A program made the translations under genes and the position numbers. This document shows positions 4,807 through 64,000 of a stretch of 64,000 nucleotides of DNA, piece by piece. How positions within the stretch are numbered: position 1 is the first letter of the stretch; the number at the start of each line of letters is the position of its first letter. Under the pieces are notes generated by a model. That model made no database searches. It had not been told where the DNA came from and worked only from the letters and a program-made list of their open reading frames with translations. Where the stretch lies: positions 62,001 through 126,000 of IMG/VR virus record IMGVR_UViG_3300047994_000374. The stretch is one strand, 5' to 3'.

Positions 4807-4986
4807 TAGTTACCAAAATCCAATAATTTACTCAATACCTTCTCTAACTTCTTCGCCGCATCATATGGATGATTTGCATAGACTTCAAGCTCGACTACTT
4901 CACTGATCACCTTGTCTCCATCAACACCTCCATCATTGAGACATTTCTCAACTGAAATGGGAATTGTAATTCTATAAGTAGCCATT

Positions 4987-5651: not shown

Positions 5652-5776
5652 AAGTATTCATTGCGCCTACAATATCGGTATGTTTTACGAATCTTGATAG
5701 GCTCCACATAAGCATTGTCACGATAACTAAATTCTTTACTCATATTAGTATTCTCCTTTAATCTATTGAATGGGAA

Positions 5777-6582: not shown

Positions 6583-6706
6583 GTTAATTATTACCTGTGT
6601 TTATTAAATGGGAAAATTTTATAGTCCATCATAATGCGAAGAACTAATCCAAGGACTGCTAAAGCACATACGCAGGTTGCAATAATGAATTGTAAAGTTT
6701 CGTTAG

Positions 6707-6979
6707 TCATAGGTACTCACGCACGCTTGTATATTTGAAGGTCGGATCGATTGAAGCCAAGAGTGTCTTATAATAATCAATCTGCTTCGAAAGTCCAGGG
6801 ATACTACAATATTTTTGATGACCCCTTATACTTACTTCTGGATCCGAAGTGCCACATTCATTACAGCGCCAATAAGGATTACCACCACCAATAGGGACAT
6901 GCATTTGATCCAATCTATTTTCAAGGAGACGAATTTTATTTCGAATTCGTTTTGCTGCTGGTATGTGATTTGCTTTCAT
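6707..6979 (-). CDS. Hypothetical protein with CxxC...HxxxC motif
   Basis: ORF track. Confidence 0.65.
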   Translation of the reverse strand: MKANHIPAAKRIRNKIRLLENRLDQMHVPIGGGNPYWRCNECGTSDPEVSIRGHQKYCSIPGLSKQIDYYKTLLASIDPTFKYTSVREYL

Positions 6980-7044
6980 AATTCACACCGAAATTATAAC
7001 GCCATGTTTATTATTTATTTTATCTTCAATTGAATATAATATTT

Positions 7045-7275
7045 CTACTGATTTACACAGTTACATGGGAAATTATATTTATAAATGACTCGGCTCCAGT
7101 TATCAGGGTCATCATTTTTATCAAACACGCCGAACCCATTAAAATCATACATAAATACCCAATCCGCGCCGGTCTGAATACATTCGACAGCAAACTCACA
7201 TGCTTCAATTTTTGTTTTGAAATTGAAGTATGAGCAAGCCTTGGTCTGTTTATTGAATGATTGAAGTCGAATCAT
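7045..7275 (-). CDS. Hypothetical protein
   Basis: ORF track, tiles with neighbours. Confidence 0.55.
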   Translation of the reverse strand: MIRLQSFNKQTKACSYFNFKTKIEACEFAVECIQTGADWVFMYDFNGFGVFDKNDDPDNWSRVIYKYNFPCNCVNQ

Positions 7276-7277
7276 AT

Positions 7278-7700
7278 TTATTGGCCGTATTTTTTACTAT
7301 TCCAATTCGGATCTTTTTCAAGGCGAACGGTGCCATCCATCCAGAAGTAAAGTGGAATAAAAAAAATAGCCGCCCCATCTTCGTCGGCTGGCAAAAAAAT
7401 TTCATTAACAAAATTATACTCTTTTTTCAAGTCATGAGATGCATCCCCAAGATGCTGACTAACTTCAGAAGTTTTTAAAATTCTTGGTTCGGTGTCCTTC
7501 TTTTGCCCCTTCTTTCGGAGCTTGACTAAGTTCTTGACATGGACAGTGGAAGACATTGCATCATCCCAAAGAACCACAACGGATTGAGGGTTCAATTTGA
7601 TATCATTGCAAACCACTTTACCTTTAACTACTGTTGAGTGCCCGCTATATTCAATCATCATAACGCGTTGGTCAATGGGAAAATCTTTAGCTGTCTTCAT
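7278..7700 (-). CDS. SH3-like domain protein, paralog of 5777-6310
   Basis: Box 26 nt upstream; shared LYxWxDxTVRLExDP C-terminus. Confidence 0.75.
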   Translation of the reverse strand: MKTAKDFPIDQRVMMIEYSGHSTVVKGKVVCNDIKLNPQSVVVLWDDAMSSTVHVKNLVKLRKKGQKKDTEPRILKTSEVSQHLGDASHDLKKEYNFVNEIFLPADEDGAAIFFIPLYFWMDGTVRLEKDPNWNSKKYGQ

Positions 7701-7739
7701 AGTTGTATCTCGATTTATAAATAGAAATGGGAAATGAAT

Positions 7740-7812
7740 TAGGACACATTGGGATCGTGTGGTTTAAAGTTCCACCGTATCCCAATGCGATCTAAATACA
7801 TACATGTGCCTA
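7740..7812 (-). other. Intergenic stem-loop (candidate structured RNA)
   Basis: CATTGGGAT (7747-7755) pairs with ATCCCAATG (7779-7787); inner GTGG/CCAC; imperfect outer stem. Confidence 0.45.
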
Positions 7813-7937
7813 AACTGTAGACATGAATAGGCTTTTGTGCGGTTCTACTGCGCTTGATAAAGGACTTGTATGTCTTTGCCCTTTATCAATTAGTGAAATA
7901 GAGTTGATAGGTAATCTCATCTATTCCAGATATACTT

Positions 7938-8324
7938 TTAATATTTCAATCGGAATTGTTCTGCAATGCTCATCAATTGCTCTTCCCAAAGCTGTGGATC
8001 AAAACTATCATGAGTCGCTTGTAGAGCATCCAGCATCGCAATCATTTTCTTGTCTAGTTTAATCCCGCTAGACTTCAAAGCATCTTTAAGAAGTTTAGTT
8101 TTCTTTTTATCTGACGGATAGTAAGCATCGCCAAAAGCCCCGCCCTCTATCGACTCTTAATAGAACTTGTCTTTAATCAAGCATCCAATGGCACACTTAA
8201 GACCACGAGGACCACGATAAAGACAAATTCCACCATTCGCCGAACCTATAATGCTCTTCTTATTTTGCTTCAGAAGATGACGTTTGACTTTAGTGAAAAC
8301 TTTTTGACGGTCAGCTTTGCTCAT
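7938..8324 (-). pseudogene. Frameshifted paralog of the gene at 1-166
   Basis: MSKADRQKVFTKVKRHLLKQNKR, then a frame change to ...CLYRGPRGLKCAIGCLIKDKFY*; box ~28 nt upstream; may be assembly error. Confidence 0.65.
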
Positions 8325-8359
8325 TATATTTATTCTCTCTTAAATTAGATAAATGGGAA

Positions 8360-8722
8360 TCAAGAACCGAACTGATCAAATATAAAATCATAAACTGCAA
8401 CCAAAAGCTCGTCATCAGTCTTGTACCACTTCTTGCATTTGAAATCCATAATCCGCTCTTCCCCGCCAGGACCAACAGCAACAATCATATAGGCATCCTG
8501 GAGATAATCGAATCTCTGTTGAACTGTAAGAACTTTAACTCGCGGACTCAGGAGGCGGTTTAAAGTTTCAATACCTTCAGGGCGTGAAAAAATGGGAAGA
8601 GCACGTGTGTTTGAAGTGTCTACTTTCTTTTCCGCTTTTTTCAACTGATCGACCAAGACATCGGTAATCAATGCGGTAATGCAATCGGTAGGACTTCCAG
8701 CTTTACGATAAGGATTATTCAT
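8360..8722 (-). CDS. Hypothetical protein
   Basis: ORF track; abuts 8723. Confidence 0.7.
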   Translation of the reverse strand: MNNPYRKAGSPTDCITALITDVLVDQLKKAEKKVDTSNTRALPIFSRPEGIETLNRLLSPRVKVLTVQQRFDYLQDAYMIVAVGPGGEERIMDFKCKKWYKTDDELLVAVYDFIFDQFGS

Positions 8723-9094
8723 TTAGAAGCTCGGGTCTCGATAGTTTTCTTTTTCGCCGAGGGTCAAAAAGTAATACCCTTTATGTACCCAGTATCCGCC
8801 CTTACTCAAACGAAAAGGCATCACTCGTTCTTTATTGTTATCAGTGGAAACATAAATAGTTTTGGGAGTGGTACGAACAACCGTAGCGGCATAGGAATCA
8901 GAGCCAATACTGATTGTTGCATCCGTACCAGCTACCACATCAATCGTTTCGTGGTAGCCGGTTTCTTTATTAAGGCGAATAACTTTCATATCAGCCTTCG
9001 TACTCATGACGAAACTTCTTGTTATTCTTTCCACCACGGTTATGACCTTGGTGTTCTTGACGCTTGCACCCACTACAAAGGCCATCGTCATCAT
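8723..9094 (-). CDS. Hypothetical phage protein (ATIxxGSDxYxxTV...YRDPSF)
   Basis: ORF track; real start probably internal (~9007). Confidence 0.65.
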   Translation of the reverse strand: MMTMAFVVGASVKNTKVITVVERITRSFVMSTKADMKVIRLNKETGYHETIDVVAGTDATISIGSDSYAATVVRTTPKTIYVSTDNNKERVMPFRLSKGGYWVHKGYYFLTLGEKENYRDPSF

Positions 9095-9179
9095 TCATTG
9101 CAGGTTTTTGCTCACAAGCTTCACACGGAAGGTATCGCATAGTATCTATCTATTCTTTCTATTAAATGGGATTGATTGT

Positions 9180-9422
9180 TTATTTGATTTTGTCAATAAG
9201 TTTTTTTAAGTTAGCTTCAAAAAGTTCATCATTCATTTCTTTAGGATCTATATATGTTTCTTCAGGGATAAGATCGGCATACTCTCCACCGGAATCGCCC
9301 GAAGTAAAAGTATGTTCACAATTGCCGCACTTAAACTTTGACTTGTGGGAACCATATCGATGACTTCCACAATAGGTATACTTACCTTTACGACAAACAT
9401 TGCATAGATATTTATTGCTCAT
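9180..9422 (-). CDS. Zinc-ribbon protein
   Basis: CNVC...CGNC. Confidence 0.7.
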   Translation of the reverse strand: MSNKYLCNVCRKGKYTYCGSHRYGSHKSKFKCGNCEHTFTSGDSGGEYADLIPEETYIDPKEMNDELFEANLKKLIDKIK

Positions 9423-9464
9423 GATTAAATGGGATTAGTAATTACTGACGCCAATAAAAATTTT

Positions 9465-9815
9465 CTATTTTCTTTGTGACGTTTTAATTCGAGTTCGCTT
9501 ATGATAGTCACCAAGAATATCACCGACCGGATCTAAAGTTCCGCCGATTTCTAAAAGAACTTTCCGCCAAGCATCGGTATGACCTTGCCCAGAAATCAAA
9601 TGCGCAACTTCATGCAAGCAAAGATAATGTTCAGTCAATCGTTTCTCGGAAAGGAAACAGATCCATCCTTTGTAATCTCCACTCGTATGTGCGTGTGCCT
9701 TTGCGCGGAAACGACTGCCAATGCCCCGCTCAACGCAACCGCCACAGAACACTCCTTTAACCTCTGGACGGTTTAGTTCTTGTGGCCATTCAGATTTCGG
9801 AAGCTTGCCTTTCAT
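9465..9815 (-). CDS. SprT-like (HExxH) metallopeptidase-fold protein
   Basis: LHEVAHL...GHTDAW. Confidence 0.7.
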   Translation of the reverse strand: MKGKLPKSEWPQELNRPEVKGVFCGGCVERGIGSRFRAKAHAHTSGDYKGWICFLSEKRLTEHYLCLHEVAHLISGQGHTDAWRKVLLEIGGTLDPVGDILGDYHKRTRIKTSQRK

Positions 9816-10171
9816 CGTTCCTGCTCCGGCTCAAAAAACTCTTCTTTAGTCAGCCACTTGCCATCGTCTTTAAAGTATTCGTAGTACCAACTCTCATATC
9901 CAATCATACATAAGTCTGATTGAATCCAAGCCCTAATTACAATTGCTGCAACCGGATCTGGATGGCTGTCGTCTCCCATAAGGTGAATGACATCAGCTCT
10001 ATTATTTCGCCATTCGTAGCGGTTATGTTCTGAGATTGCGAAGTTGCCAAGCTCAATCGCTTTTTCCAACGTGTTAGCTCGGACAATGCAATTCGTATCC
10101 GACTCGTTTGCATCACGGTCTTTCCAGTTTCCGTATTGAACTACATGCCATAGCTTCATTTGACGTCCCAA
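9812..10171 (-). CDS. Hypothetical protein
   Basis: ORF track, overlap with 9465-9815. Confidence 0.65.
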   Translation of the reverse strand: MGRQMKLWHVVQYGNWKDRDANESDTNCIVRANTLEKAIELGNFAISEHNRYEWRNNRADVIHLMGDDSHPDPVAAIVIRAWIQSDLCMIGYESWYYEYFKDDGKWLTKEEFFEPEQER

Positions 10172-10310
10172 TCTTCAATCGTGAACCAATGGCTTTTAGT
10201 CATTTCTGATTCATGATCCTTCACATATTTGTCCGCCTTTTCTTGCGTAGATCCGACAAATACCAAATCATTTCCCTCATGCAAAAAAACTTCAAATACG
10301 CAATAAACTT

Positions 10311-10592
10311 TCATTTGACAATCACATCCAATAGTTCAACATTCCAAATACGTTTCGTTCCATGATCAATGTCCGTAATGAAACAACGAGGGGAACCATT
10401 CAAGTAACGCCAAGGCACTTTGTTCTTTCGAATATCCAGCGTCGAGTATTTTTTAATGATGCGCCCGAAACGATATTCAATTGCACCTGTGACTCGCCAA
10501 TGGGCACTAGGCTTGATGCCAACTTGGGGACGATAGATGCAATCCCAGTCGTCAATGAACAGCGTTTCTTGAGGAGTAACCAAACAAATCAT
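10311..10592 (-). CDS. Hypothetical protein (DxDHGTxRxW motif)
   Basis: Variant box (TCCCCAT) 25 nt upstream. Confidence 0.7.
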   Translation of the reverse strand: MICLVTPQETLFIDDWDCIYRPQVGIKPSAHWRVTGAIEYRFGRIIKKYSTLDIRKNKVPWRYLNGSPRCFITDIDHGTKRIWNVELLDVIVK

Positions 10593-10657
10593 GTATTTAT
10601 GTGCACGTATTTTATAAATGGGGAATTATTTTCAAATCGTGAAAATTTCTTGATTGT

Positions 10658-10960
10658 TCATTTGTCGTCCTCATCATCTTTCTCGTCGCCTTCAAATGGG
10701 ATGCCTGGAAAATAAAGGATCGTACCAAGCCCCATCGAATCCGTGCAAGACCGACGCAGACCCTTTGCCAGCTCTTCCAAGGCATCTGCACTGTCATCCG
10801 AGTCAAGGGTCGCAAGCTCTTCCAAGACGGATGCAACACAAGCCATGACAGTTTGCCCGCGTTCCAAAGTAACTCCGAGACAATTCTTGCCATACATTCC
10901 TCGTCCTGAATACGAACGAGTTGAATAGCCAGTCGATTCCAATAGCTCTTGAAGGTTCAT
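10658..10960 (-). CDS. Hypothetical phage protein (YSGRGMYGxxC motif)
   Basis: Box 25 nt upstream. Confidence 0.75.
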   Translation of the reverse strand: MNLQELLESTGYSTRSYSGRGMYGKNCLGVTLERGQTVMACVASVLEELATLDSDDSADALEELAKGLRRSCTDSMGLGTILYFPGIPFEGDEKDDEDDK

Positions 10961-11159
10961 AATACTCTTTATTTGTTAAATGTAAATGGGAATTATTTTT
11001 TAGCGCGCTTCGGATGAACTCTTTCCGGCCAAACTCTTCCGAGCTGCACTGGAACGCCATCATGACCTCGCAAGGCTTCCCACGCTTCGACTTCGTTCTT
11101 GTAGGGACCCATACGCATAATTTCAAGGGTGCCAGCAAAATATTGAACCTTGATCGTTT

Positions 11160-11342
11160 TCATTCGTCGTCATTCTCCCCATCAAAATTCGGATCAATTT
11201 CATTCCTGAAAGTTCCATCGGTCCAACGGAAAACTCCAGTATAAATAATCTGTTGTCCGTGATTGTCTTCTTCCAATGCAGCACCACGAGCACATTCAGG
11301 ATTCGTAAACTTTTCAACTTCTTCAGCGGTAAACGTTTTCAT
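11160..11342 (-). CDS. Small acidic protein, paralog of 28824-29018
   Basis: LEEDNHGQQIIYTGVFRWTDG versus LERDNYGQLIIY...YTGVFLWSDG. Confidence 0.65.
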   Translation of the reverse strand: MKTFTAEEVEKFTNPECARGAALEEDNHGQQIIYTGVFRWTDGTFRNEIDPNFDGENDDE

Positions 11343-11680
11343 TTGCTTTCCTTTGATCCAATCGCTTGCTTATATCCAAATGGGAAATTTTCTTTTGCGG
11401 TTTCATGAGCAAATGTTTTTACCACTTCAATCGCACCGCTTGTTCGGACCATGGTTGTCAGTGCGTTTTCAAACAATTCAGGGAAGGTCAGGAATACAAT
11501 GGACCACTCGCACTCTTGCTCATACCATCCGCCAGCTTTTCTCCAAGCTTGATGCACCTTCAAATTCTGCGCGCTATCAAGCTTGAATCCGCCGCCAGCT
11601 ACCGTGCGAATTTCTTTGATTCCCTTGGCAAGATTTCGTGTGCCAAGAATTCTACCCCAAGGTGAGTAATCGTAGTTCAT
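11339..11680 (-). CDS. Hypothetical protein (SPWG...GGF...WYE..CEW motif)
   Basis: Box 25 nt upstream. Confidence 0.75.
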   Translation of the reverse strand: MNYDYSPWGRILGTRNLAKGIKEIRTVAGGGFKLDSAQNLKVHQAWRKAGGWYEQECEWSIVFLTFPELFENALTTMVRTSGAIEVVKTFAHETAKENFPFGYKQAIGSKESK

Positions 11681-11713
11681 ATTATTCTTTGTCCGTAATA
11701 AGTGAATGGGAAA

Positions 11714-11923
11714 TTACTTCTTTTTGATACCAGCAAGCTCCAGCGCTTCTGAAAGTCGTTGTGGCAATTTAGATTCAAACGCACACGAACGATCCCACGC
11801 GTCTCCGTAACCACAGTAATCAAGATGATCGACTGCTTCTTTCAATGCCTTGCCGAGCTTCTTGATAATTTCTTTTTGGGCTTTTTCTTTTTCAGTTAAC
11901 TTTTTCATTGATGATACGCGCAA
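11714..11923 (-). CDS. Hypothetical protein
   Basis: ORF track; likely start 11908. Confidence 0.6.
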   Translation of the reverse strand: MRVSSMKKLTEKEKAQKEIIKKLGKALKEAVDHLDYCGYGDAWDRSCAFESKLPQRLSEALELAGIKKK

Positions 11924-12288
11924 TCAACACGAGTTATACCACATGGACATTCATGTGCAAGTATCGTGGGCTTCAAAAGATTTCGCATACGAGTTTCTTC
12001 AGGATCGAAATCTTTCAAACCAACACTGTTACAGTATTCTTTAGTGATGTTAGATAGTCCCTTATCAGCTGCGGACCATACACGAGGCGATACGGAGGTA
12101 TAAACATCTTCTTCGGCATCAATAAAATTATCCGAGTTAAATCTACCTTCTTTACCATTATCTGATGTAATTTTATAAAGATTAAAGGGACCTGCCGTCT
12201 CACAACTATTTACGTTGTAAGTTTTACCTTGTGTCAATCCGTGTATTCCGTTATTGAACGAGGGACGATTGTAAATTACTTTTTTCAC
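11905..12288 (-). CDS. Hypothetical protein with C-terminal CPCG...CxYH
   Basis: ORF track. Confidence 0.65.
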   Translation of the reverse strand: MKKVIYNRPSFNNGIHGLTQGKTYNVNSCETAGPFNLYKITSDNGKEGRFNSDNFIDAEEDVYTSVSPRVWSAADKGLSNITKEYCNSVGLKDFDPEETRMRNLLKPTILAHECPCGITRVDCAYHQ

Positions 12289-12698
12289 GGCTTTTTATAA
12301 ACCTTCTCATTGATCGTTTCAGGGCTCAATTCACAAAACTTATTGAATGAATACGTTTTGAAAATGGCGCTCAATGGATTGTTATTCCCATCAACAGCGT
12401 CTGCAACTGAAACCGTTTGTTCTTCTGAATTCACAACCAAAATGGGATAATTATAATCACACAAGTAAGTCGAAAGACCTGCACCAAGCTCACCCGAGAC
12501 ATCATCTTTAATCATCGCGCTGAAAATCATACGCGCCAGATAGGGCTCATCATTCCAACGGACATTACGCTTCAATACAGTCTGAAGAATTTCTGGAAGC
12601 GCATGCCCACTATAGTGACTATACATAAAGATGCCGACGCCACTTGCAACACCATTGCTTGGATGTTGAACCATAAAAATATTTCCACGAGAACCCAT
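12285..12698 (-). CDS. Hypothetical phage protein (MGxR...YxHxxG motif)
   Basis: ORF track; AAGGA upstream. Confidence 0.75.
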   Translation of the reverse strand: MGSRGNIFMVQHPSNGVASGVGIFMYSHYSGHALPEILQTVLKRNVRWNDEPYLARMIFSAMIKDDVSGELGAGLSTYLCDYNYPILVVNSEEQTVSVADAVDGNNNPLSAIFKTYSFNKFCELSPETINEKVYKKP

Positions 12699-12752
12699 GA
12701 TTTTTATATTCCTTTTATATACTGCCCAAACGTGAATGAATGGGAAATCGAA

Positions 12753-13415
12753 TTACTTCGTGCGCTTCAGCCAAGCCACTTGAAGCTTCAAAATTTCATT
12801 AGCAGGAGCGATTGACAATGTAAAGGTCATCAGCTCATCCTTTGAATTCGCATATGTAAATTCATGAGTGCCCAAAGGAAAATCATTATCCGATGCAAGT
12901 TGCACAGATTTTTCTGTACCCACGCGCATGTGTTTGACCGCGTTCTTTACAGTGTTGCGAAGCTTTTTGTCAAATTGACTCTTTTTATTAATAGCTTCCA
13001 GCTCTTCCTTCTCTGCCTTTGAACGAAGCACCCGCACCAAGGTTGTGTCTTGGTATTCGCGTTCCAATTCGGCTGCCAATTCTGCGACCTTCAAATAGAA
13101 ATTAGCTCGCTGAACTTGAAGCGTGGGAGTTTCAGTGCTGGAAGAATGACTTGTTTTGAATGCAACTTTATAGTTCCGAATATCATTACCCACTTCATCC
13201 TCAACGGAAGTGTAATCTGATTCAAACTCAATATACAGATTGACCTCCGTGCCAAATCCAGTAAAACGAACATTCATCCACTCATAGCCAGAAGGTTCAT
13301 TCATTTGACGAACAAGTTCTTCCGTATCGGAATCTCGCAATGCACAAGCCAATGTCGGATGATTCACGATCAAACGGGCGACTTCACTTTTAAACGAATT
13401 GAATTCTTGTTTCAT
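12753..13415 (-). CDS. Hypothetical protein
   Basis: 220-aa ORF. Confidence 0.75.
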   Translation of the reverse strand: MKQEFNSFKSEVARLIVNHPTLACALRDSDTEELVRQMNEPSGYEWMNVRFTGFGTEVNLYIEFESDYTSVEDEVGNDIRNYKVAFKTSHSSSTETPTLQVQRANFYLKVAELAAELEREYQDTTLVRVLRSKAEKEELEAINKKSQFDKKLRNTVKNAVKHMRVGTEKSVQLASDNDFPLGTHEFTYANSKDELMTFTLSIAPANEILKLQVAWLKRTK

Positions 13416-13446
13416 AATGATTATTTAATATTCCAGTGGAGAATTA

Positions 13447-13740
13447 TTATTTTGCAGCGTCTTTATTATCGCCGGTCCAAGCTTTGAATAATTTATCAAG
13501 CTTCTCGCGGGCTTTTTGCTTATCTATTTCGTCAGCGTTATGATGAAAGAGATCGTAAATCGTCTCTCTCAATTCTCTCGCGCCGTGCTCTAGATTATCC
13601 GCAAGTCGAAAGCAACGATGGGAAAGAAATTTATCCTTGCGGTATTGTTCAGCTTGAATAATTTCTTTATCGTGTTCCCGGATTTGCTTTTGCCATTCTT
13701 CTTTAGAAATCATCCCCGTTGCCTTTCTATCAAAGCTCAT
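13447..13740 (-). CDS. Hypothetical protein
   Basis: ORF track; start reassigned to ATG 13740 downstream of the box. Confidence 0.65.
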   Translation of the reverse strand: MSFDRKATGMISKEEWQKQIREHDKEIIQAEQYRKDKFLSHRCFRLADNLEHGARELRETIYDLFHHNADEIDKQKAREKLDKLFKAWTGDNKDAAK

Positions 13741-13777
13741 AATAATATTACTCTCTTTATTTATTATGAAATGGGAA

Positions 13778-13871
13778 TGAGATTGGAATAAAGCCAACTC
13801 AGCCTTTGATACTGACGGTTTAGTATCCGTCCGTTATAGCGATCCTCCGAGTTGGCTTTATTCCAATCTCA
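13778..13871 (-). ncRNA. Candidate structured RNA: perfect 23-bp stem enclosing a 48-nt structured core
   Basis: 13778-13800 is the exact reverse complement of 13849-13871; inner GATACT/AGTATC and GACGG/CCGTC pairings. Confidence 0.5.
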
Positions 13872-13878
13872 AGCCTTA

Positions 13879-14088
13879 TCAAACAAGATCGATAAGGTCA
13901 ACTAAAATATTCATTTCAAATCTGGAAAATTTTTGCTCACGAATCAAGTCAATAATTTTACCAAGCTCTTGACCACGTTCAAGCTTCAATCCATAACAAT
14001 GTTTGGTTGCATCTTCATAAGACTTACAAGGAACTGCAATAGTAACAGTCATCTTATCTTTTGAAATAGAAACTTTTGTCTTCTTCAT
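13879..14088 (-). CDS. Hypothetical protein
   Basis: Box 24 nt upstream. Confidence 0.65.
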   Translation of the reverse strand: MKKTKVSISKDKMTVTIAVPCKSYEDATKHCYGLKLERGQELGKIIDLIREQKFSRFEMNILVDLIDLV

Positions 14089-14119
14089 AATTATGTTTTT
14101 GCATATGTGTAAATGGGAA

Positions 14120-14356
14120 TTAAATTAATTTGTATGACGTTTTCTTTACAACCAATTGAAGCGGCTCGTCATCGCATTCCGGACCAGCACAAGTAAACGC
14201 TTCTTTAGAGTTCTTCCAGAAGTAATCACTCGGGTTAGAGCTGTATTCCGAATGGCAACACGCACACACAAGCATGCTACCATCCTTGTACTTCTTTTTC
14301 AAAGTAACTACAGTAACTTTTTTCATTTCTTTTCTCGAATCATTGAAGTGCCCCAA
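14120..14356 (-). CDS. Small zinc-ribbon protein
   Basis: CACC...YSSNPSDYF...CAGPEC. Confidence 0.65.
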   Translation of the reverse strand: MGHFNDSRKEMKKVTVVTLKKKYKDGSMLVCACCHSEYSSNPSDYFWKNSKEAFTCAGPECDDEPLQLVVKKTSYKLI

Positions 14357-56854: not shown

Positions 56855-59041
56855 ATGACAATAATTAAAGAAAGTTTCAGCTTTGATGATCTTATGCTTC
56901 AGCCTAAGTATTCCGAAATTAAATCTCGTTCTGAAGTAAATTTATCTGTTCAGGCTACAAAGGGATTTCGATTTGATCACCCTATCGTTCCAAGTAATAT
57001 GAAAACGATTATGGGATATGATTTAGCCAAAGAAAATCTATTAAGTGGCGGATTAACTATTCTTCATCGCTTCATGCCGCTTGATGAACAATTAGGGCTG
57101 GTTGAAAAATTAAAACAAGTTCGAAGTGATTGGTCTAATTTTCTCGGAACTTCTGTTGGTGTAAAGCCAGAAGATAAAACTGCCGTTGATGAATTTGTAA
57201 AAGCGGGAGTTCGTATCCTAACAATCGATATAGCACACGGTCATAGTTTATCATGCATTGAAATGTGTAAGTATATTTCGACAACTTATCCTGATGTTCT
57301 TTTGATCGCTGGTAATGTTGCTACTGGTGAAGGTGCAAAAGATTTGTGGGAAGCTGGTGCAGATATAGTAAAATGCGGAATTGGGCAAGGTTGTTTCGGC
57401 GCCGGGACCAGAGTTTTAATGTCTAATGGTTTTTACAAAAATATTGAAGACATTAATCCTGGTGATTTTGTCATTAATAAAAATGGTAAGGCAATTAAAG
57501 TATTAAATGCTTTTTCTACTGGAATTAAAAAAGTCTCAAAATTAAAAAATAATTCCTTTTATACTGACACTTATGTTACACCAAATCATCAATTTTGGGT
57601 TGGAGATTTATCATCTGTTTCAAAGGCATCTGTAGCATCTAAGGGTTATGCTAAAATATTAGATAAGCAGAGCAAAACTAAACCAAAAACCTCTAAATAT
57701 AAATGGAAGGCAATATCAGATGCTCAAAATGATATATTATTATTGCCTAAAAATATAAAATTTAATTTACCAGATACATTTGAAATTATTTTAGATAAAC
57801 GCGATTGTGGTAATTGGAGAACGGGTGCCACTCACTCAAACGATAGTAAAATTACTCCATCTTATGATAGTGGCTACTTATTTGGAACATTTCTTGGTGA
57901 TGAACGCTCTTTATCAACTGAGCATAAGGGATCGCATATCGGAAATGTAAGGTGGTATTTTGGAAAAGAAGAATTAGATGTCGCCAATAAATTATCCTTA
58001 TGTATTAAAAATATCTTTGATAAAGATACTGCAATAACTTATAAAAAAAATATTATAGATGTTGCTTTTTACTATAAGCCATTGGGTGATTTTTTAGATT
58101 CTTTTGGCAAACATACTGGAAAACATTTGCCTGAAAATTTACTTGTCAATAATAAAAAATATTTACAGGGACTATATGATGGATTGATGGATAGTGATGG
58201 GCATTATTCAAAAGATGGAAGAGATGTTTTTTGCAATACGTCCCCCAAACTTATAGAATTATTTAATACATTAAATTTTATACTTAATGGTTATATGCCA
58301 AACAACTCTAATAGGGGCAAACAAATTGGAGGTTTAAAGAGTTGCAATCCAGATAATTTAAATGATGCCTACATATCACGAACAATGAAACGTCCAGAGT
58401 ATCGATTTACTAAAGACTATTTTGTTGTTAAAAATTTAAATTATGAAGAATTAGATTTAGAAATGGAAGTTTTTGATATTACTGTAGATTGTGATACGCA
58501 TAGCTTTATTGCAAATAATATGGTTGTTCATAATTCAATTTGTACTACCAGAGTTCAAACTGGTAATGGCGTTCCCGCGATAACAACTTTAATGGATGCC
58601 TTTGAAGCAAGAAAAGAATTGTTATTATCAGGGCGAATTAACAAAGACCGTCAATTGTTTATTATGAATGATGGTGGCGCGAAGGCTTCAGGCTGCTTTG
58701 TAAAGGGTTTGTGTTTCGCAGACCTAATGATGACTGGAAATGTCTTTGCGGGCTGCATAGAGGTTCCTGGCGAAACTATAACAGGTTCCGATGGCGCTAC
58801 CTACAAACGCTATGAAGGAAGCTCTACCCATAAAAATAATCATATTGAAGGTGTCAAAGCGATTGTCCATGAAAAGGGTCATTTCAAAGATATCCTTCAA
58901 GGACTATTCGATGGGATAAAAAGTGGTTGTTCTTACCAGGGTATTAGCAACTTAATTGATTTAAAGAGAGATCCGCAATTCGTTAAAATATCAAATGCTG
59001 GCTTAACAGAATCAAAACCACACGATGTTATTATTCAGTAA
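56855..59041 (+). CDS. guaB: IMP dehydrogenase/GMP reductase family enzyme (no CBS domains), intein-containing
   Basis: FDDL..QP; IDIAHGH; AGNVAT; GIGQG/SICTTR catalytic loop; spliced length 347 aa; guaB versus guaC not resolved. Confidence 0.8.
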   Translation: MTIIKESFSFDDLMLQPKYSEIKSRSEVNLSVQATKGFRFDHPIVPSNMKTIMGYDLAKENLLSGGLTILHRFMPLDEQLGLVEKLKQVRSDWSNFLGTSVGVKPEDKTAVDEFVKAGVRILTIDIAHGHSLSCIEMCKYISTTYPDVLLIAGNVATGEGAKDLWEAGADIVKCGIGQGCFGAGTRVLMSNGFYKNIEDINPGDFVINKNGKAIKVLNAFSTGIKKVSKLKNNSFYTDTYVTPNHQFWVGDLSSVSKASVASKGYAKILDKQSKTKPKTSKYKWKAISDAQNDILLLPKNIKFNLPDTFEIILDKRDCGNWRTGATHSNDSKITPSYDSGYLFGTFLGDERSLSTEHKGSHIGNVRWYFGKEELDVANKLSLCIKNIFDKDTAITYKKNIIDVAFYYKPLGDFLDSFGKHTGKHLPENLLVNNKKYLQGLYDGLMDSDGHYSKDGRDVFCNTSPKLIELFNTLNFILNGYMPNNSNRGKQIGGLKSCNPDNLNDAYISRTMKRPEYRFTKDYFVVKNLNYEELDLEMEVFDITVDCDTHSFIANNMVVHNSICTTRVQTGNGVPAITTLMDAFEARKELLLSGRINKDRQLFIMNDGGAKASGCFVKGLCFADLMMTGNVFAGCIEVPGETITGSDGATYKRYEGSSTHKNNHIEGVKAIVHEKGHFKDILQGLFDGIKSGCSYQGISNLIDLKRDPQFVKISNAGLTESKPHDVIIQ
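57392..58534 (+). mobile_element. Intein with LAGLIDADG homing endonuclease (381 aa)
   Basis: Starts CFGAGT, ends VVHN, followed by Ser; YLFGTFLGD and YLQGLYDGLMDSDG blocks. Confidence 0.9.
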
Positions 59042-59054
59042 GAAAGAATATTAA

Positions 59055-59660
59055 ATGAATAAATCACAAATCAAAAGAATATTAAATCGGACTCTTCTTA
59101 TTGGAGCCGACATTTGTAAGCAAGAACTCTCAATTCCAAATTCAGGCGGACGGCGAAGAGATATTAAAGGCAAGAGCATTGAAAATTATGTCAATACGCT
59201 TATTACCCAAGTAATTAAAGATAAAAATTTGCCATATGCGATAAAACAAAATTATACCATTCAGTTCGAAAAAGATTATTCAATAAATGCAGACCATGTT
59301 GTATTAAATAATAAGAATTCGCCTTTATTTATAATTGAATCCAAAGATTATGCTGACTCGAATATGTTAGCCAGTCTTATGTTTAAATCACAAAGCATGA
59401 TCAAAAAGTATAAGAATTCAAAATGCATTGGGATTTTTATGCAGGAGTCTGGTCAAGGTATTCATCAAGTCGAAACGATGAAGAAGTATAATGGTATTCC
59501 TAAAAACAAAATGTCAGTATATAATTTTGAAGGCTCATGTTCTGTATTCAATCGAAAACGCAATCCATCAAATACCACTTATATTCTTGATTATATGGTG
59601 GAAGAACTTATTGATTATACTCAAGGACTTTACAACTACCTTTATAAAACTATCAAATGA
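59055..59660 (+). CDS. Putative PD-(D/E)xK restriction endonuclease
   Basis: G..IE...ADHV...IIESK; ATGA-coupled to the MTase. Confidence 0.55.
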   Translation: MNKSQIKRILNRTLLIGADICKQELSIPNSGGRRRDIKGKSIENYVNTLITQVIKDKNLPYAIKQNYTIQFEKDYSINADHVVLNNKNSPLFIIESKDYADSNMLASLMFKSQSMIKKYKNSKCIGIFMQESGQGIHQVETMKKYNGIPKNKMSVYNFEGSCSVFNRKRNPSNTTYILDYMVEELIDYTQGLYNYLYKTIK

Positions 59661-60730
59661 ATTTTAATCTTATTGAAAAGATAGGCGAAGGCAATAACTA
59701 TCTTTACAATGGAGATAATTTAAAAGTCTTATCTGAAATTAAAAGCACTTACAAAAACAAAGTCGATCTCATTTATATTGACCCTCCCTACAACACGGGC
59801 AAGAAGATGGGCAAGTATAATGACAATTTTTCTTCCCATGAAAATTGGATCACTTTCATGGAGCCTCGACTTACTTTGGCTCGTGAATTTTTATCGGAAT
59901 CTGGAACGATCTTCATTAGCATTGGAGAGAACGAAGAGGCGCATTTAAAACTTCTTTGTGATAAAATCTTCGGTGAAAAGAATCGAGCCTCTACAATCAT
60001 ATGGCAATGCAAATATACTGTCTCAAATGATAAGTCGGGTATCTCATCACAAACCGAATACATTTTAGTTTATGCAAAGGATATTAAAAATATAGCTATA
60101 AATCCAGATCCATTGCGTCCTAAATATGTAAAAACTTCCTACAAAAATCCCGACAATGATGCTCGTGGCTTATGGAGAGGTGGTGTTCAATTATTCAAAA
60201 AGAAAAACAAACATTCCTATACCGTAACATCTCCTACGGGTAAAGAATGGACTATGCCCTGGAACTACAGTGAAGAACGATGGAAGAGTTATTTAGAAGC
60301 AAATGACTTAATCTATTGGGGGGAGAGCGGAGATACTCGTCCGGTTAAAAAGGTCTTTCTCAAAAATAATAAGGGCGTCAAGATTAAAAACTTATGGTTA
60401 GGTGATGAGGTCGGATACACTGCAGATGGTGGAGATGAGCTTGAAGAATTGCTTGGAGATAGAAACGAATTCATTTATCCTAAACCTGTAAAGCTTATGA
60501 AACGGATTATTCAAATTGCAAGTAAGCCCAATTCTTTGATGATGGACTTCTTTGCTGGAAGCGGGACTTTTGGACAAGCCGCTCTTGAATTGAATGCCGA
60601 AAATGATTACAATAGGAACTTCATACTTATTACCAATAACGAAAATAACATTTGTGATGGTGTTTGTTTGCCACGATTAAAAAAGGTGATTGGTAAAGTT
60701 GGTGGCAGTTTAAATTATTTTGGAGAATGA
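59657..60730 (+). CDS. Beta-class amino-DNA methyltransferase (Mod-like)
   Basis: GDNL; IYIDPPY precedes PKP...DFFAGSGT. Confidence 0.9.
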   Translation: MNFNLIEKIGEGNNYLYNGDNLKVLSEIKSTYKNKVDLIYIDPPYNTGKKMGKYNDNFSSHENWITFMEPRLTLAREFLSESGTIFISIGENEEAHLKLLCDKIFGEKNRASTIIWQCKYTVSNDKSGISSQTEYILVYAKDIKNIAINPDPLRPKYVKTSYKNPDNDARGLWRGGVQLFKKKNKHSYTVTSPTGKEWTMPWNYSEERWKSYLEANDLIYWGESGDTRPVKKVFLKNNKGVKIKNLWLGDEVGYTADGGDELEELLGDRNEFIYPKPVKLMKRIIQIASKPNSLMMDFFAGSGTFGQAALELNAENDYNRNFILITNNENNICDGVCLPRLKKVIGKVGGSLNYFGE

Positions 60731-61001
60731 TATGACGGAAGATAATTCATACAGCACCTATTTTTTGGGAGATTATCTTATCGCGTATGATCCGAATATC
60801 TTGGTTAAAAAATATGAATGCAAAGATTTCCATAGCATTAGTTTTTTGATTGGCGATTGGGAATATTGTTTGGTTCATAATTATGTTATAGGTGATAGGA
60901 TTTTAATTAGTTCAAAGATGGGCGATAGTAGAGATATACCTTTTAAAGTTGAAACATTTAGATTTTTACCAGAGAAAGTGAATGCGAGGAAAATAAAATG
61001 A
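60720..61001 (+). CDS. Hypothetical protein
   Basis: ORF track, overlaps neighbours. Confidence 0.6.
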   Translation: MENDMTEDNSYSTYFLGDYLIAYDPNILVKKYECKDFHSISFLIGDWEYCLVHNYVIGDRILISSKMGDSRDIPFKVETFRFLPEKVNARKIK

Positions 61002-61735
61002 CTGAATTTGATATGAAGCAGTTTTTTGGTAGTGAGAAAGTATTGGATAAAGGTCATGTTGAATTGATCGATGGAATGGTGACCGATCCTCGTTTAAAGA
61101 TTGTTAATGCGGCGCGCGTATCATTCAATAAAGAAGTGCAAGAATTGTCTGAAAAAGATATTAAGCTCATTAAATTTTTACATGAGCATGAGCATTACTC
61201 TACTTTTAGACATTCTTATTTTTCATTTCGAATTAAAGCACCTCTTATGGTTTTCAGACAGTGGTGGAAATATCAAGTAGGATGTGATTGGATTGAAAAT
61301 GAAAATGTAGGAACTATTGAGATCCCCGAGACAAATTGGAATGAGGCTTCGGGAAGATATGTGCATTTTACACCTGATTTTTATATTCCAGAAGAAATTC
61401 GAATTCAATCAAAAAATAATAAACAGGGTAGTGAAGGTAAATTAGAAATATTACAAAATGGTGAAGATCCCGTGAAATTCTTTAATGACGCTTGTAATTA
61501 TATGTTCGCCCGATATACGGAAATAGTTAATTCTGGCGGAGCAAAAGAACAAGCTCGAATGCTTCTTCCACAAAATATTTATTCAGAATGTATTTGGACA
61601 GTTAGCTTACAAGGCGTATTGTATTTCTTGCATCAACGACTGAAATCTGATGCTCAATTCGAAATTAGAAAATATGCCACTTCTGTTGCTAATTTAATAT
61701 TACCTATTATAAAACCATTAGAAATTAATATGTAA
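60998..61735 (+). CDS. thyX: FAD-dependent thymidylate synthase
   Basis: VNAARVSF; H.STF.H; NEASGRY; KEQARMLLP; AQFEIR. Confidence 0.88.
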   Translation: MTEFDMKQFFGSEKVLDKGHVELIDGMVTDPRLKIVNAARVSFNKEVQELSEKDIKLIKFLHEHEHYSTFRHSYFSFRIKAPLMVFRQWWKYQVGCDWIENENVGTIEIPETNWNEASGRYVHFTPDFYIPEEIRIQSKNNKQGSEGKLEILQNGEDPVKFFNDACNYMFARYTEIVNSGGAKEQARMLLPQNIYSECIWTVSLQGVLYFLHQRLKSDAQFEIRKYATSVANLILPIIKPLEINM

Positions 61736-62113
61736 TTAAAATCCTGGGTTAGCAATCCAAAATGAACCAGTATAAATTACTGTCCAAGCATTAAATGAAG
61801 TTGACGTTTGGGGCGTATATCATATAATCATCCAATCTGAAATTCCATCATAAATTAAAGTCACGGAGCCCCTAGCAGTAGTAATTTTGGTGCTTGAAGC
61901 TCCATCAATCGTTTGTCCGCTATTAGCTAAAATAGTTATATTATATGTATCAGCGTGCCCGGACTGATCTTTAACAACTAATATCTGACCAGCTATTGGA
62001 TGTAGTGATGTCGTTAAATTATAAGCATTGGATACATTTACTAAAACAGTCAAATCTCCATTAGCTGCCGTTGATGATGTACCAGAAGTAATTTTAACGA
62101 TTTCACTTTTTTC
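61736..62113 (-). pseudogene. Two in-frame orphan fibre-protein C-termini
   Basis: Same frame as 62114-64000 but after its TAA: EKSEIV...YDGISDWMII*, then YTPQ...VIYTGSFWIANPGF*. Confidence 0.55.
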
Positions 62114-64000
62114 TTAAATAACCGTCCAAGTAGGCGTTAATAATTTCGTAGAAGATATACTCATTTCTTCGTAGCCCGCGCTCAATACTAAATGAGTATC
62201 ATCTGTAATAGATTTAACTATATAGTATTTGTCCGGATCTGAACTAAAATATACAGGTTGATTTACTTTTAATAAAGTAGTAAATGATGTGCCCGTTCCA
62301 GTAACATTTGCATTAAGCGCATTTAAAGATACTGTTCCATTTATTTGTAGTGGAGCACAACTCAGATAAGCTTTTTGTCCTGGATTTATTGGCACCGTCG
62401 CGTTTGCATTACAACCAACGTTAATATTATAATTTGTATAGTTATAAATAATTCTTTCATACCCGGCAATACATGGTAAAAATAAATTATGCGATGTTGT
62501 CATAACATTATTTGTATCTTGTACATAAATTGTTTTCCATAAGAAATCATTAACTAAAGCGGTGTAATCAGTGTCTGTTACCCAGTTAATTGTATGTGAG
62601 CTTAATTCTTGCGGCGTAATGTAAACGGGTCCTTGAATTCCATATCCATCTTCAGGCATCCAAGGCTCATAGAATGGTAAATATATGGTCGTAGCAGTTG
62701 CTGTGGTTCCCGAATAAGCTTGCGTCAATGTGAATGTAGTACTCGATGTGACTGTCGAGGCGACAATATATTTTGAATTTGGCTGCGTAATGAAAGTAAC
62801 TGGAGCGCCAGCAATAAATGTTTGTGCTGTTGATGCGGTAACGGTATTCGATCCATTAATGACATGGAAGGTGCCAACTGCGGTGATATTTTTATTATCT
62901 GGATAATATCTTTGACCAGACAATCGAATAGGCCCTGTTCGAAATCCATCTAATGTAACTGGTTCAAAATGAAATATACCTTGAGTTGGTAATGACCCGC
63001 CGATGTCCAAATCTAAAATAGCCTCAATATTTGTAGCTTGACACCCTCCCATTCTAAATAATGGAATACCTGGGCTTGTCGCTAATGCAATAGCGCCACC
63101 AAAAATATTCAATTGTGATAGTGATCCAATAAACATTGCACAATCTGTCACAAAAGTTTGGTCATCATAAATGTAATTATCTATAATTGTAGCTGGTTGC
63201 CCAGGACTAACATCTGCAAAAAAATAAGCTCCGAAGCCAGATGGAACAATGTATAAATTTGAAAACAATCCTCCACACTGTGATGTAATTGCCCAACCAT
63301 TTGAAACAATTTGTGTATTACTTACTTCTACGAATGCTGATCCCTGATCTATTCCAATACCAAAATTCCAATAATTACCAGCGGCGTTGCCTTGAACTTG
63401 GATAACACAATCTGATATTCGGGTTCTATAAGAGAATTGACAAATTTCTAATCCTCGACTGTAAGAGAAAAAATTACAACGACTTATATTGCTATTGAGC
63501 AATGCGCTTGTAGTAATACATGCGCCTATACTTTGGAACTGTAGATCGCTAACATTTGATCCAATAGAATAATTGTCTCCCCAAGGTTGAAATCTAAGCC
63601 AAACATGATATGGATTTAAATTGTAATTTACTGTTGTTGATTGTGCTATAATGTAGCCTGCCGCCAAATTTGGACTTCCAAAGCCTGTTGGGGCTGGAAC
63701 TACGGGTCGATGGGCGCTACTGAAATTTACTAAAAATGCCGTTAGTCGATTAATTAAAATTAGCTCAGATGTTGGAGCGGTAAAATTTGCATTATAAATG
63801 GCTTGTTGACACATTCTAACAGAACCATATTGAAACCCCGTTCCATAATTATATGCAAGATCGCCAACAGTAATGCCCCAACCCGAAACATCCTGACCAA
63901 TCATAATCGTTTCATAATTATTTTGAACGATAGTTCCCGTTGCAGTGGTAGAAGTTTTAGTACCATTAACAAAAACACACAAGTGAATTCCATCATAAGT
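62114..64000 (-). CDS. Tail fibre/spike-like structural protein (5' end outside the window)
   Basis: Over 620 aa, T/G/N-rich; lectin-like then beta-helix-like segments; VTGTGTSFT repeats. Confidence 0.65.
   Translation of the reverse strand, partial: TYDGIHLCVFVNGTKTSTTATGTIVQNNYETIMIGQDVSGWGITVGDLAYNYGTGFQYGSVRMCQQAIYNANFTAPTSELILINRLTAFLVNFSSAHRPVVPAPTGFGSPNLAAGYIIAQSTTVNYNLNPYHVWLRFQPWGDNYSIGSNVSDLQFQSIGACITTSALLNSNISRCNFFSYSRGLEICQFSYRTRISDCVIQVQGNAAGNYWNFGIGIDQGSAFVEVSNTQIVSNGWAITSQCGGLFSNLYIVPSGFGAYFFADVSPGQPATIIDNYIYDDQTFVTDCAMFIGSLSQLNIFGGAIALATSPGIPLFRMGGCQATNIEAILDLDIGGSLPTQGIFHFEPVTLDGFRTGPIRLSGQRYYPDNKNITAVGTFHVINGSNTVTASTAQTFIAGAPVTFITQPNSKYIVASTVTSSTTFTLTQAYSGTTATATTIYLPFYEPWMPEDGYGIQGPVYITPQELSSHTINWVTDTDYTALVNDFLWKTIYVQDTNNVMTTSHNLFLPCIAGYERIIYNYTNYNINVGCNANATVPINPGQKAYLSCAPLQINGTVSLNALNANVTGTGTSFTTLLKVNQPVYFSSDPDKYYIVKSITDDTHLVLSAGYEEMSISSTKLLTPTWTVI

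What the first reader, a model, noticed from the sequence alone, without database searches (positions are those of the whole stretch)
61736..62116. Stack of in-frame orphan C-termini behind the fibre-like gene
Seen: after the TAA of the fibre-like gene (...TPTWTVI*), the same frame continues for 97 codons with no usable ATG start (...VKDQSGHADTYNITI...TIDG...SVTLIYDGISDWMII*) and then for 27 codons (...WTVIYTGSFWIANPGF*). Both pieces look like terminal modules of phage fibre/structural proteins. Inference: relics of serial C-terminal replacement, as in Rhs/CDI orphan modules, forming a reservoir for receptor-binding variation; or stop-readthrough isoforms.
Basis: partly seen in the sequence, partly recalled or inferred. 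Interest (0 to 1): 0.6.

Follow-up and report, generated by a model that had tools for sequence, protein, structure and literature searches.

The report
Tailspike gene's severed last domain
In a 394-kb phage from moss metagenomes, the stretch behind a tailspike gene is that gene's own last domain, cut off by a real premature stop codon and followed by a short scrap of an older copy; this is ordinary decay and reshuffling of a host-recognition gene.

Summary
Gene A ends at TAA 62114-62116. The same frame then runs 97 codons to TGA 61820-61822, and 27 more codons to TAA 61736-61738, which abuts the stop of convergent thyX.

The 97 codons encode a complete XD1/gp9/gp10-type domain (pLDDT 94.5; top fold match CBA120 TSP4-N). 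In relatives this domain usually ends the protein where the piece ends, so TGA is a native stop.

An intact 2778-aa relative (P0043) is colinear with A's body, its last barrel domain and this domain, straight across the TAA. The best reading is therefore that the piece is A's own C-terminal domain, severed by a premature stop.

The stop is not an error. An independent short-read assembly reproduces it at about 42x, and contigs from two other samples bridge it.

Just beyond the window A has also lost its start: a 73-aa N-terminal anchor stub sits one base out of frame with the body.

The 27-codon piece weakly but non-randomly matches the last strands of the same domain family (empirical P 0.001-0.005). 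It is probably a displaced remnant.

An Rhs/CDI-like stack of orphans is only partly supported. Readthrough and a TTG-started 77-aa gene are unlikely. This is a known kind of event and of low to moderate interest.

The parts
62114..64000 (-). Tailspike-type gene A, the part inside the window. The called ORF is 811 aa from a TTG at window-equivalent 64549. The frame stays open to 65086, beyond the window.
   Evidence: A is 50.5% identical over 952 aa to residues 1734-2676 of the intact 2778-aa protein P0043 and 30% identical to P0003. The start-less upstream extension gives tailspike PHROG hits with E down to 8e-11.
62117..62332 (-). Last translated domain of A (residues 740-811). It is a small 'GTGTSF' barrel-type domain and a second copy of the one at residues 555-625.
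   Evidence: PHROG phrog_1980, E 2.6e-5. Internal repeat, E 0.007. Colinear with P0043.
62114..62116 (-). Premature in-frame TAA (context TAA-G) in the linker between the barrel and the final domain.
   Evidence: It aligns inside a continuous linker of P0043. It is reproduced at depth about 42 in X1 and bridged by contigs in X3 and X5.
61823..62113 (-). Piece 1: 97 codons encoding a complete XD1/gp9/gp10-type beta domain, the native C-terminal domain of gene A.
   Evidence: AF2 pLDDT 94.5, with strands from residue 5. Foldseek matches to CBA120 TSP4-N, T4 gp10 and T4 gp9, TMq up to 0.84. HMM match to T4 gp10 residues 66-137. Identity to C-termini of large proteins: 64% P0008, 52% P0011, 50% P0004. 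All family-invariant residues are kept. dN/dS 0.16 against P0008.
62051..62053 (-). TTG used by gene callers as the start of a 77-aa ORF (P0006). It lies inside the fold, after the first two strands.
   Evidence: GGAG sits only 2 nt upstream, whereas the genome's usual spacing is 5-9 nt.
61820..61822 (-). TGA, the native stop of the domain and of the ancestral gene.
   Evidence: In 15 IMG/VR loci and in P0004, P0005, P0008, P0011 and P0043 the protein ends 0-3 residues from this point.
61739..61819 (-). Piece 2: 27 open codons. Residues 6-22 (61754-61804) resemble the last two strands of the same domain family. Probably a remnant of an older gene end that abutted thyX.
   Evidence: Profile built without the window's piece: empirical P 0.005 and 0.0013. 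Pairwise against piece 1's end: P 0.01-0.03. An 18-nt repeat lies 78 nt apart (D13). No other relative in the genome.
61736..61738 (-). TAA closing the 27-codon frame, directly adjacent to the thyX stop.
60998..61735 (+). thyX (flavin-dependent thymidylate synthase), convergent neighbour that bounds the locus.
   Evidence: Pfam PF02511, E 6.6e-37.

Best explanation
The window belongs to a 394-kb phage genome from moss metagenomes. Gene A is a tailspike-type gene built as N-terminal anchor, pectate-lyase-like body, Laminin-G-like region, barrel domains and a final XD1/gp9/gp10-type domain.

The 97-codon piece is that final domain. A premature TAA in the linker just before it has cut it off from the gene, and the TGA at 61820-61822 is the original stop. 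The lesion is real and present in several samples.

In this genome the gene is also headless. Beyond the window's end, a 73-aa anchor stub, the remnant of a neighbouring giant tailspike gene, is joined one base out of frame to A's body. The join lies at a GGCGG microhomology and most likely marks a deletion. Gene A is therefore a recently inactivated tailspike gene, and the 97-codon domain is most likely not translated.

The 27-codon piece is 3' spacer that probably keeps the last two strands of an older, displaced copy of the same domain. It is a scar of an earlier replacement of the gene's 3' end.

Shown: the coordinates, the homology, the fold, the colinearity with an intact relative, and the reality of the lesions.
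Inferred: the order of events, the deletion mechanism, and non-expression.
For: 1. Domain identity. pLDDT 94.5. Foldseek top hits are CBA120 TSP4-N, the KP1 baseplate, T4 gp10 and T4 gp9, with the same set of neighbours (gp9, gp10, 6O38, 4DNY) that PMC8825819 lists for XD1. HMM hit to gp10 residues 66-137 and to TSP4 residues 92-167.

2. Native end. Relatives stop 0-3 residues from the piece's end.

3. Continuity. P0043 aligns to A residues 701-909 in a single alignment across the TAA (35% identity over 216 columns, E 3e-26). It aligns to A's body at 50.5% over 952 aa. Many other proteins match the barrel and the domain in one stretch. Homology and predicted strands start right after the stop, before the TTG.

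4. Real lesion. X1 shows 0 differences at about 42x, and X3 and X5 contigs bridge the TAA.

5. Headless gene. The frame stays open for 179 start-less codons that carry tailspike homology. The Nmod stub is 86% identical at protein level to the N-terminus of P0008, and about 81% at DNA level including upstream DNA. The syntenic contig L022 and an X5 contig show the intact layout: a giant gene ending in the domain, then a stop/start overlap into the next gene, which begins MSY... and continues into the body.

6. Long-term purifying selection on the piece (dN/dS 0.16) with no decay. This means the inactivation is recent.

7. Piece 2 matches the profile's C-terminal end.
Against: - The piece is perfectly intact: no frameshift, and all invariant residues are kept. 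That also fits continued use.
- In run X5 the TAA junction seems to coexist with an A gene that has its own ATG (inferred from short contigs of mixed strains). The stop may therefore predate the loss of the start and be tolerated or useful.
- The piece's closest relative (P0008, 64%) differs from the body's closest relative (P0043, 50%; its own final domain is only about 30% identical to the piece). A mosaic boundary thus lies near the TAA. Gene conversion among tandem copies could explain this, but so could cassette insertion.
- Free-standing genes made of this domain alone exist elsewhere.
- No expression data exist.
Confidence: 0.55

Rival explanations
1. Serial C-terminal replacement. Incoming tailspike cassettes carrying their own stops replaced the upstream part of a resident gene twice. 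This left first a 27-codon remnant and then a whole displaced final domain as silent orphans that recombination could recapture.
For: - The locus is demonstrably mosaic. X5 contigs show breakpoints inside the domain (near L003 1075) and at the 5' junction.
- The piece and the Nmod stub both have their best relatives at the two ends of one gene, P0008, in the syntenic contig L022, while the body is P0043-like.
- Piece 2 looks like the end of another copy.
- Both pieces are in frame.
Against: - P0043 carries body, barrel, linker and domain as one ORF, with the same linker length across the TAA position. An illegitimate junction would not be expected to keep frame, spacing and an exact domain boundary.
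- No repeated DNA links A to the pieces.
- In X5 the upstream giant gene keeps its own copy of the domain while A still has the TAA plus the domain start behind it. The domain behind A is therefore A's own.
- The piece is the next domain in the series, not an alternative to A's last domain.
Confidence: 0.15
2. Programmed stop-codon readthrough. Most ribosomes stop at TAA, and a minority continue to give a longer isoform that carries the XD1-like domain.
For: - The domain is in frame, intact, begins right after the stop, and keeps all invariant residues.
- The TAA occurs in several samples.
Against: - UAA-G is a strong terminator context (general knowledge).
- TAA ends 70% of this genome's long ORFs.
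- No tRNA able to read UAA was found. The only suppressor-like tRNA has anticodon CTA.
- The RNA downstream of the stop has no unusual structure (z -1.28).
- The gene lacks a start in this genome.
Confidence: 0.1
3. An independent small gene. The 77-aa TTG ORF, or a product from a non-canonical start, is made as a free-standing adaptor.
For: - Gene callers predict it (P0006).
- Free-standing 108-112-aa genes of this domain exist in other phage contigs with good starts. One of them sits directly behind a large gene with a stop/start overlap.
Against: - The TTG lies after the first two predicted strands, and homology reaches back to the stop.
- GGAG is only 2 nt from the TTG, against the genome's usual 5-9 nt.
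- The free-standing relatives all have 15-25 extra N-terminal residues and ATG or GTG starts with AGGAG-like sites.
- No relative starts at the equivalent position.
Confidence: 0.07
4. Sequencing or assembly artefact: the stops are errors in the record.
For: The record is a metagenome-assembled contig, and two lesions in one gene look suspicious.
Against: A Logan contig of run X1 (91 kb, k-mer depth about 42) is identical over the 3.7 kb laid. Contigs of other samples, X3 and X5, carry the TAA. X3 also carries the out-of-frame 5' junction. X1 may be the source sample; X3 and X5 are not marked as such.
Confidence: 0.02

Closest known systems
XD1 domain of T4 gp10/gp9 and of CBA120 tailspike TSP4 (PDB 5IV5, 1QEX, 7REJ/7RFO/7RFV; PMC8825819)
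   Same: Same fold (Foldseek prob 1.0, TMq 0.8-0.84). Weak but specific profile match to gp10 residues 66-137 and TSP4 residues 92-167. Same structural neighbours as published for XD1. Found in tail, baseplate and tailspike proteins.
   Different: Here, and in most relatives found, the domain is the extreme C-terminus of tailspike-like proteins or a free-standing small protein. In gp10 and TSP4 it is an N-terminal or internal spacer. Sequence identity to the solved examples is only 17-24%. Its partner or role is unknown.
Tail-fibre genes inactivated by a single lesion, e.g. the stf frameshift of laboratory lambda (lambda PaPa; Hendrix and Duda 1992, as cited in PMC2762979, which also shows selection for stf frameshifts)
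   Same: An accessory host-recognition gene is split into consecutive ORFs by one small lesion, while the downstream part stays intact and recognisable. The phage remains viable.
   Different: Here the lesion is a nonsense codon rather than a frameshift. There is a second lesion, an out-of-frame deletion junction at the 5' end. The case comes from uncultured natural populations.
Rhs/CDI orphan toxin-immunity modules
   Same: Promoter-less C-terminal coding pieces lie behind a large polymorphic gene at a recombination-prone locus. The 27-codon scrap may be a displaced end.
   Different: There is no shared core-sequence handle before the pieces, no immunity genes, and no toxins. The main piece is colinear with the gene, not an alternative to its C-terminus.
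Modular, multi-tailspike loci of Ackermannviridae and Alcyoneusvirus-type phages (PMC8432352, PMC11414711, PMC10253068; titles and abstracts seen)
   Same: Tandem tailspike genes with conserved attachment modules and swappable bodies, and gp10-like domains.
   Different: In relatives of this phage several tailspike bodies are fused into single giant proteins of 2166-2778 aa, capped by the XD1-like domain. No branching has been demonstrated.

Membership tests
XD1 / gp9 / gp10-type tail domain | Fold: compact beta domain superposable on T4 gp9/gp10 XD1 and CBA120 TSP4 XD1. | tested here: met
   AF2 model pLDDT 94.5. Foldseek: 7rfo_B E 2e-5, TMq 0.82; 9f4b TMq 0.84; 5iv5, 1qex, 6o38 and 4dny are also hit. 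This is the same neighbour set as Table 2 of PMC8825819.
XD1 / gp9 / gp10-type tail domain | Sequence-profile relationship to gp10 or TSP4. | tested here: met
   Profile of 13 homologues against PDB: gp10 residues 66-137, E 1.2e-3; TSP4 residues 92-167, E 0.013. PHROG hits to tail-fibre proximal subunit and baseplate protein families, E about 1e-5. The matches are weak but consistent.
XD1 / gp9 / gp10-type tail domain | Trimeric assembly and a spacer or docking role in a tail complex. | not testable with these tools
   No complex prediction was run and no partner is known. The role of XD1 is itself unsettled (PMC8825819).
Rhs/CDI-type orphan module array | Each orphan is preceded by a fragment of the conserved core sequence that is homologous to the main gene and allows recombination. 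| tested here: not met
   Only chance-level 14-28-nt imperfect repeats are found between gene and pieces.
Rhs/CDI-type orphan module array | Orphans are alternative versions of the main gene's C-terminal module. | tested here: not met
   Piece 1 is the next colinear domain after A's barrel, as in the intact protein P0043. Only piece 2 aligns to the end of piece 1, weakly.
Rhs/CDI-type orphan module array | A cognate immunity gene follows each module. | tested here: not met
   No ORF lies between the pieces. The region ends at convergent thyX.
Programmed stop-codon readthrough | A leaky stop (usually UGA or UAG) with a stimulatory context or structure, or a matching suppressor tRNA. | tested here: not met
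   The stop is UAA followed by G. TAA is 70% of stops. Of the 5 tRNAs, only anticodon CTA is suppressor-like. Downstream fold z -1.28.
Pseudogenised (lesion-split) tail-fibre or tailspike gene | The pieces are colinear and in order with an intact homologue, interrupted by discrete lesions. | tested here: met
   Anchor stub, body, barrel and final domain are colinear with P0043 and P0008. The lesions are an out-of-frame junction and a TAA, both real.
Pseudogenised (lesion-split) tail-fibre or tailspike gene | Loss of expression of the downstream part. | not testable with these tools
   No listed holder of this stretch is on record as an RNA run, and no proteomics exist.

The most novel reading that the evidence does not exclude
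The conserved end modules of these tailspike genes, the N-terminal anchor and the XD1-like final domain, may act as recombination handles between which enzymatic bodies are exchanged among co-circulating strains. The silent in-frame remnants would then be a usable reservoir. Alternatively, the TAA may be a tolerated switch that yields tailspikes with or without a C-terminal docking domain and so changes how the host-recognition complex is built.
Probability: 0.12. Interest if true: 0.6.

Novelty: new member of a known kind. Interest (0 to 1): 0.3.

Why it matters
The practical point is about annotation. The 811-aa and 77-aa ORFs called here are fragments of one tailspike gene of about 1,140 aa. 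The 77-aa 'hypothetical protein' is a truncated XD1-like domain. Host-range predictions from this genome should therefore not count gene A as an intact receptor-binding protein.

More broadly, the locus gives a snapshot from uncultured phage populations of how a jumbo phage's host-recognition region changes between nearly identical strains:
- deletion at a 5-base microhomology,
- a nonsense mutation,
- breakpoints inside a conserved terminal domain.

It also shows that an XD1/gp10-type domain commonly caps tailspike proteins at the C-terminus or occurs as a small free-standing protein. That role has not been studied.

Tried and rejected
- **Alternative genetic code.** Rejected. Reading TGA, TAG or TAA as sense does not rescue coding density in a meaningful way, and TAA is the main stop. 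TAA=X was used only to read the broken phage gene through for searches.
- **Low ORF density in the first 100 kb.** This was an artefact of my 150-aa threshold. The region is packed with small minus-strand ORFs.
- **TAG readthrough candidates at genome 241167 and 249566.** These are off-frame readings of a collagen-like repeat, not real.
- **Searches that found nothing useful.**
  - blastn of the locus against the phage collection.
  - The search for related loci with gene A in viral contigs and with A's last 228 aa in metagenome contigs.
  - Exact DNA pattern for the X5-type junction in metagenome and viral contigs.
  - A scan with A's start-less N-terminal extension returned only generic pectate-lyase-motif matches.
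- **The 159-aa gene behind the homologue P0003.** Unrelated.
- **A residues 626-739 as another XD1-like domain.** Profile comparison was not significant. P0003's equivalent end matches only over 22 columns.
- **Terminator or stable structure.** None in the 84-nt spacer and none downstream of the TAA.
- **Canonical -1 slippery heptamer at the 5' junction.** None by inspection of the sequence.
- **The 27-codon piece elsewhere in the genome.** No relative by blastn or tblastn.
Full report
**Setting**

The window is bases 62001-126000 of a single 394,192-bp virus record (IMG/VR; CheckV completeness 92%). Sequencing runs that hold this DNA are moss metagenomes.

The genome is AT-rich (about 35% GC) and densely coding under the standard bacterial code. 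TAA ends 70% of long ORFs, TGA 27% and TAG 3%. Nothing suggests another genetic code.

The finding lies on the minus strand, between a large tailspike-type gene (gene A) and the convergent thyX gene (Pfam Thy1, E 7e-37).

**Observation**

- Gene A ends ...TPTWTVI at TAA 62114-62116.
- The same frame continues for 97 codons (62113..61823) to TGA 61820-61822.
- It then continues for 27 codons (61819..61739) to TAA 61736-61738, which touches the thyX stop.
- There is no in-frame ATG or GTG before a TTG at codon 21 (62051-62053). Gene callers turn that TTG into a 77-aa protein (P0006).

A long in-frame run after a stop is not unusual in itself: 22 of 213 long ORFs have one. The case rests on homology.

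**What the 97 codons are**

With an alignment of 13 homologues the piece folds at pLDDT 94.5. Its beta strands begin at residue 5, well before the TTG at residue 21.

Foldseek puts it with these structures, at TMq up to 0.84:
- the N-terminal region of CBA120 tailspike TSP4,
- a Klebsiella phage baseplate protein,
- T4 gp10 and T4 gp9,
- the CpaA and StcE domains.

This is the same neighbour list that PMC8825819 reports for the XD1 domain. A profile of the family hits T4 gp10 residues 66-137 and TSP4 residues 92-167. The piece is therefore an XD1/gp9/gp10-type structural domain, not an obvious receptor-binding tip.

In 15 IMG/VR loci, and in P0004, P0005, P0008, P0011 and P0043, the domain is the very end of the protein. 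Those proteins stop 0-3 residues from where the piece stops. The TGA is therefore a native stop.

All invariant family residues are present. dN/dS against the closest relative is 0.16, with dS near saturation. The domain was under selection for most of its history and shows no decay.

**Does it belong to gene A?**

The exhaustive HMMER search used the last 77 residues of A, an X at the stop, and the piece. Three results matter.
- The best hit for the piece is the C-terminus of a 2166-aa protein (P0008, 64% identity).
- Many proteins match the barrel domain and the XD1-like domain in one continuous stretch.
- P0043, an intact 2778-aa protein on a 129-kb contig, aligns with A residues 701-909 in one alignment that crosses the TAA. 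The linker length is the same (35% identity over 216 columns, E 3e-26). P0043 also aligns with A's whole body at 50.5% over 952 residues.

So body, barrel, linker and final domain form one ORF in a relative. The simplest reading is that the TAA interrupts a formerly continuous ORF.

No repeated DNA links gene A to the pieces. That speaks against an Rhs/CDI-type architecture.

**Are the lesions real?**

I laid Logan contigs of four runs on 3.7 kb of the locus.
- Run X1, possibly the source sample, has a 91-kb contig identical over the whole stretch at k-mer depth about 42.
- Run X3, another sample, has identical contigs bridging both the TAA and the 5' junction described below.
- Run X5, from another study, has a contig bridging the TAA with one difference. 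The position of that difference was not listed.

Sequencing error is therefore very unlikely.

**The gene is also headless** (beyond the window's end; window-equivalent coordinates)

The called 811-aa ORF starts at a TTG (64549). The frame stays open for 179 further codons up to 65086, without any start codon. That extension carries the pectate-lyase-3 tailspike motif and homology to P0003, P0004 and P0043.

Just upstream, one base out of frame, is a 73-aa ATG ORF (65002-65223). It encodes a fibre N-terminal anchor that is 86% identical to the N-terminus of P0008. DNA identity there is about 81% and includes the upstream spacer.

Contig L022, which carries P0008, is syntenic with this locus. 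It runs:
1. a homologue of the neighbouring fibre gene B,
2. P0008 (anchor ... XD1-like end),
3. the next tailspike gene, starting MSYLPN... in an ATGA stop/start overlap.

An X5 contig shows the same layout joined to our gene A:
1. the end of an XD1-like domain,
2. a stop overlapping an ATG,
3. eight codons (MSYVPANI),
4. A's body, in frame, from exactly the point where our anchor stub ends.

I infer that in our genome a deletion between two GGCGG motifs removed the giant upstream gene and A's first codons. This left an anchor stub fused out of frame to A. I found no canonical slippery site for frameshifting.

**The 27 codons**

They have no relative elsewhere in the genome and no terminator or notable structure.

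Residues 6-22 nevertheless align with the last two strands of the domain family.
- Against a profile built without the window's own piece, only 0.5% of shuffled peptides and 0.13% of random genomic windows score as well.
- Against the end of piece 1 the pairwise P is 0.01-0.03.

This is modest evidence. I read it as a probable scar of an older gene end that once abutted thyX and was displaced when the 3' end was replaced.

**Rivals**

- **Displacement of piece 1 by an incoming cassette.**
  - For: the locus is a mosaic. The piece is closest to P0008 while the body is closest to P0043. X5 contigs show a breakpoint inside the domain.
  - Against: the P0043 colinearity. In X5 the upstream gene also keeps its own copy of the domain while A still has its TAA plus domain.
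- **Readthrough.** Disfavoured by the UAA-G context, the lack of a UAA-reading tRNA, the lack of downstream structure and the missing start.
- **A separate 77-aa gene.**
  - Against: the TTG lies inside the fold and the Shine-Dalgarno spacing is poor.
  - For: real free-standing 108-112-aa genes of this domain exist elsewhere. They have proper starts and N-terminal leaders.

**Verdict**

The main piece is the gene's own last domain, cut off by a genuine premature stop in a recently inactivated, mosaic tailspike gene. The second piece is probably a small relic. This is a familiar kind of event; compare the stf lesion of laboratory lambda, and selection for stf loss in PMC2762979. It has value mainly for annotation and as a natural snapshot of tailspike-locus turnover.

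Noticed in passing
beyond the window's end: window-equivalent 65002-65223 (L003:4103-4324, minus strand) and junction about 65011-65023: A 73-aa ATG ORF encodes only a fibre N-terminal anchor and ends in TAA TAG. It is 86% identical to the N-terminus of a 2166-aa protein (P0008) in a syntenic contig. It sits one base out of frame with gene A's start-less body at a GGCGG microhomology, which probably marks a large deletion.
   Followed up: yes
window 56855-59041 (+): An IMPDH/GMP-reductase-family gene (Pfam PF00478, E 5e-72) is interrupted by an intein-like insert, with Hint and intein-splicing domain hits below the Pfam cut-offs.
   Followed up: no
window 59055-60730 (+): A 201-aa protein with a weak NERD-nuclease hit overlaps by 4 nt the start of an N6/N4 DNA methylase (PF01555, E 9e-42). 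This may be a restriction-modification-like or anti-restriction pair in the phage.
   Followed up: no
genome 333703-333777 (outside the window): ARAGORN calls a tRNA with anticodon CTA, which reads UAG, among only 5 tRNAs. TAG ends only 3% of long ORFs. I found no convincing TAG-interrupted gene. The two candidates were off-frame collagen-like repeats in a 50%-GC region at 240-250 kb.
   Followed up: partly
window 61801-61828 (+): There is a near-consensus sigma-70-like promoter match (TTGACG, 16 nt, TATAAT; 11 of 12) on the plus strand, inside the spacer/relic and pointing antisense into gene A. The number of such hits in the region is not above shuffles.
   Followed up: no
window 1-30000 and genome 1-100000: There are few ORFs over 150 aa, but the region is densely packed with 80-250-aa ORFs, mostly on the minus strand with negative GC skew. 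It is a large block of small genes rather than non-coding DNA.
   Followed up: partly
L022 (gene 3696-10196) and L023 (gene 6001-14337): Relatives encode giant single proteins of 2166 and 2778 aa. Each strings two or three pectate-lyase-type tailspike bodies between one N-terminal anchor and one XD1-like end, followed by a further tailspike gene in a stop/start overlap.
   Followed up: partly
L104:1186-1512, L105:4001-4327, L107:1192-1530: Free-standing 108-112-aa genes consist essentially of the XD1-like domain and have proper start sites. One lies directly behind a large gene. Their role is unknown.
   Followed up: partly
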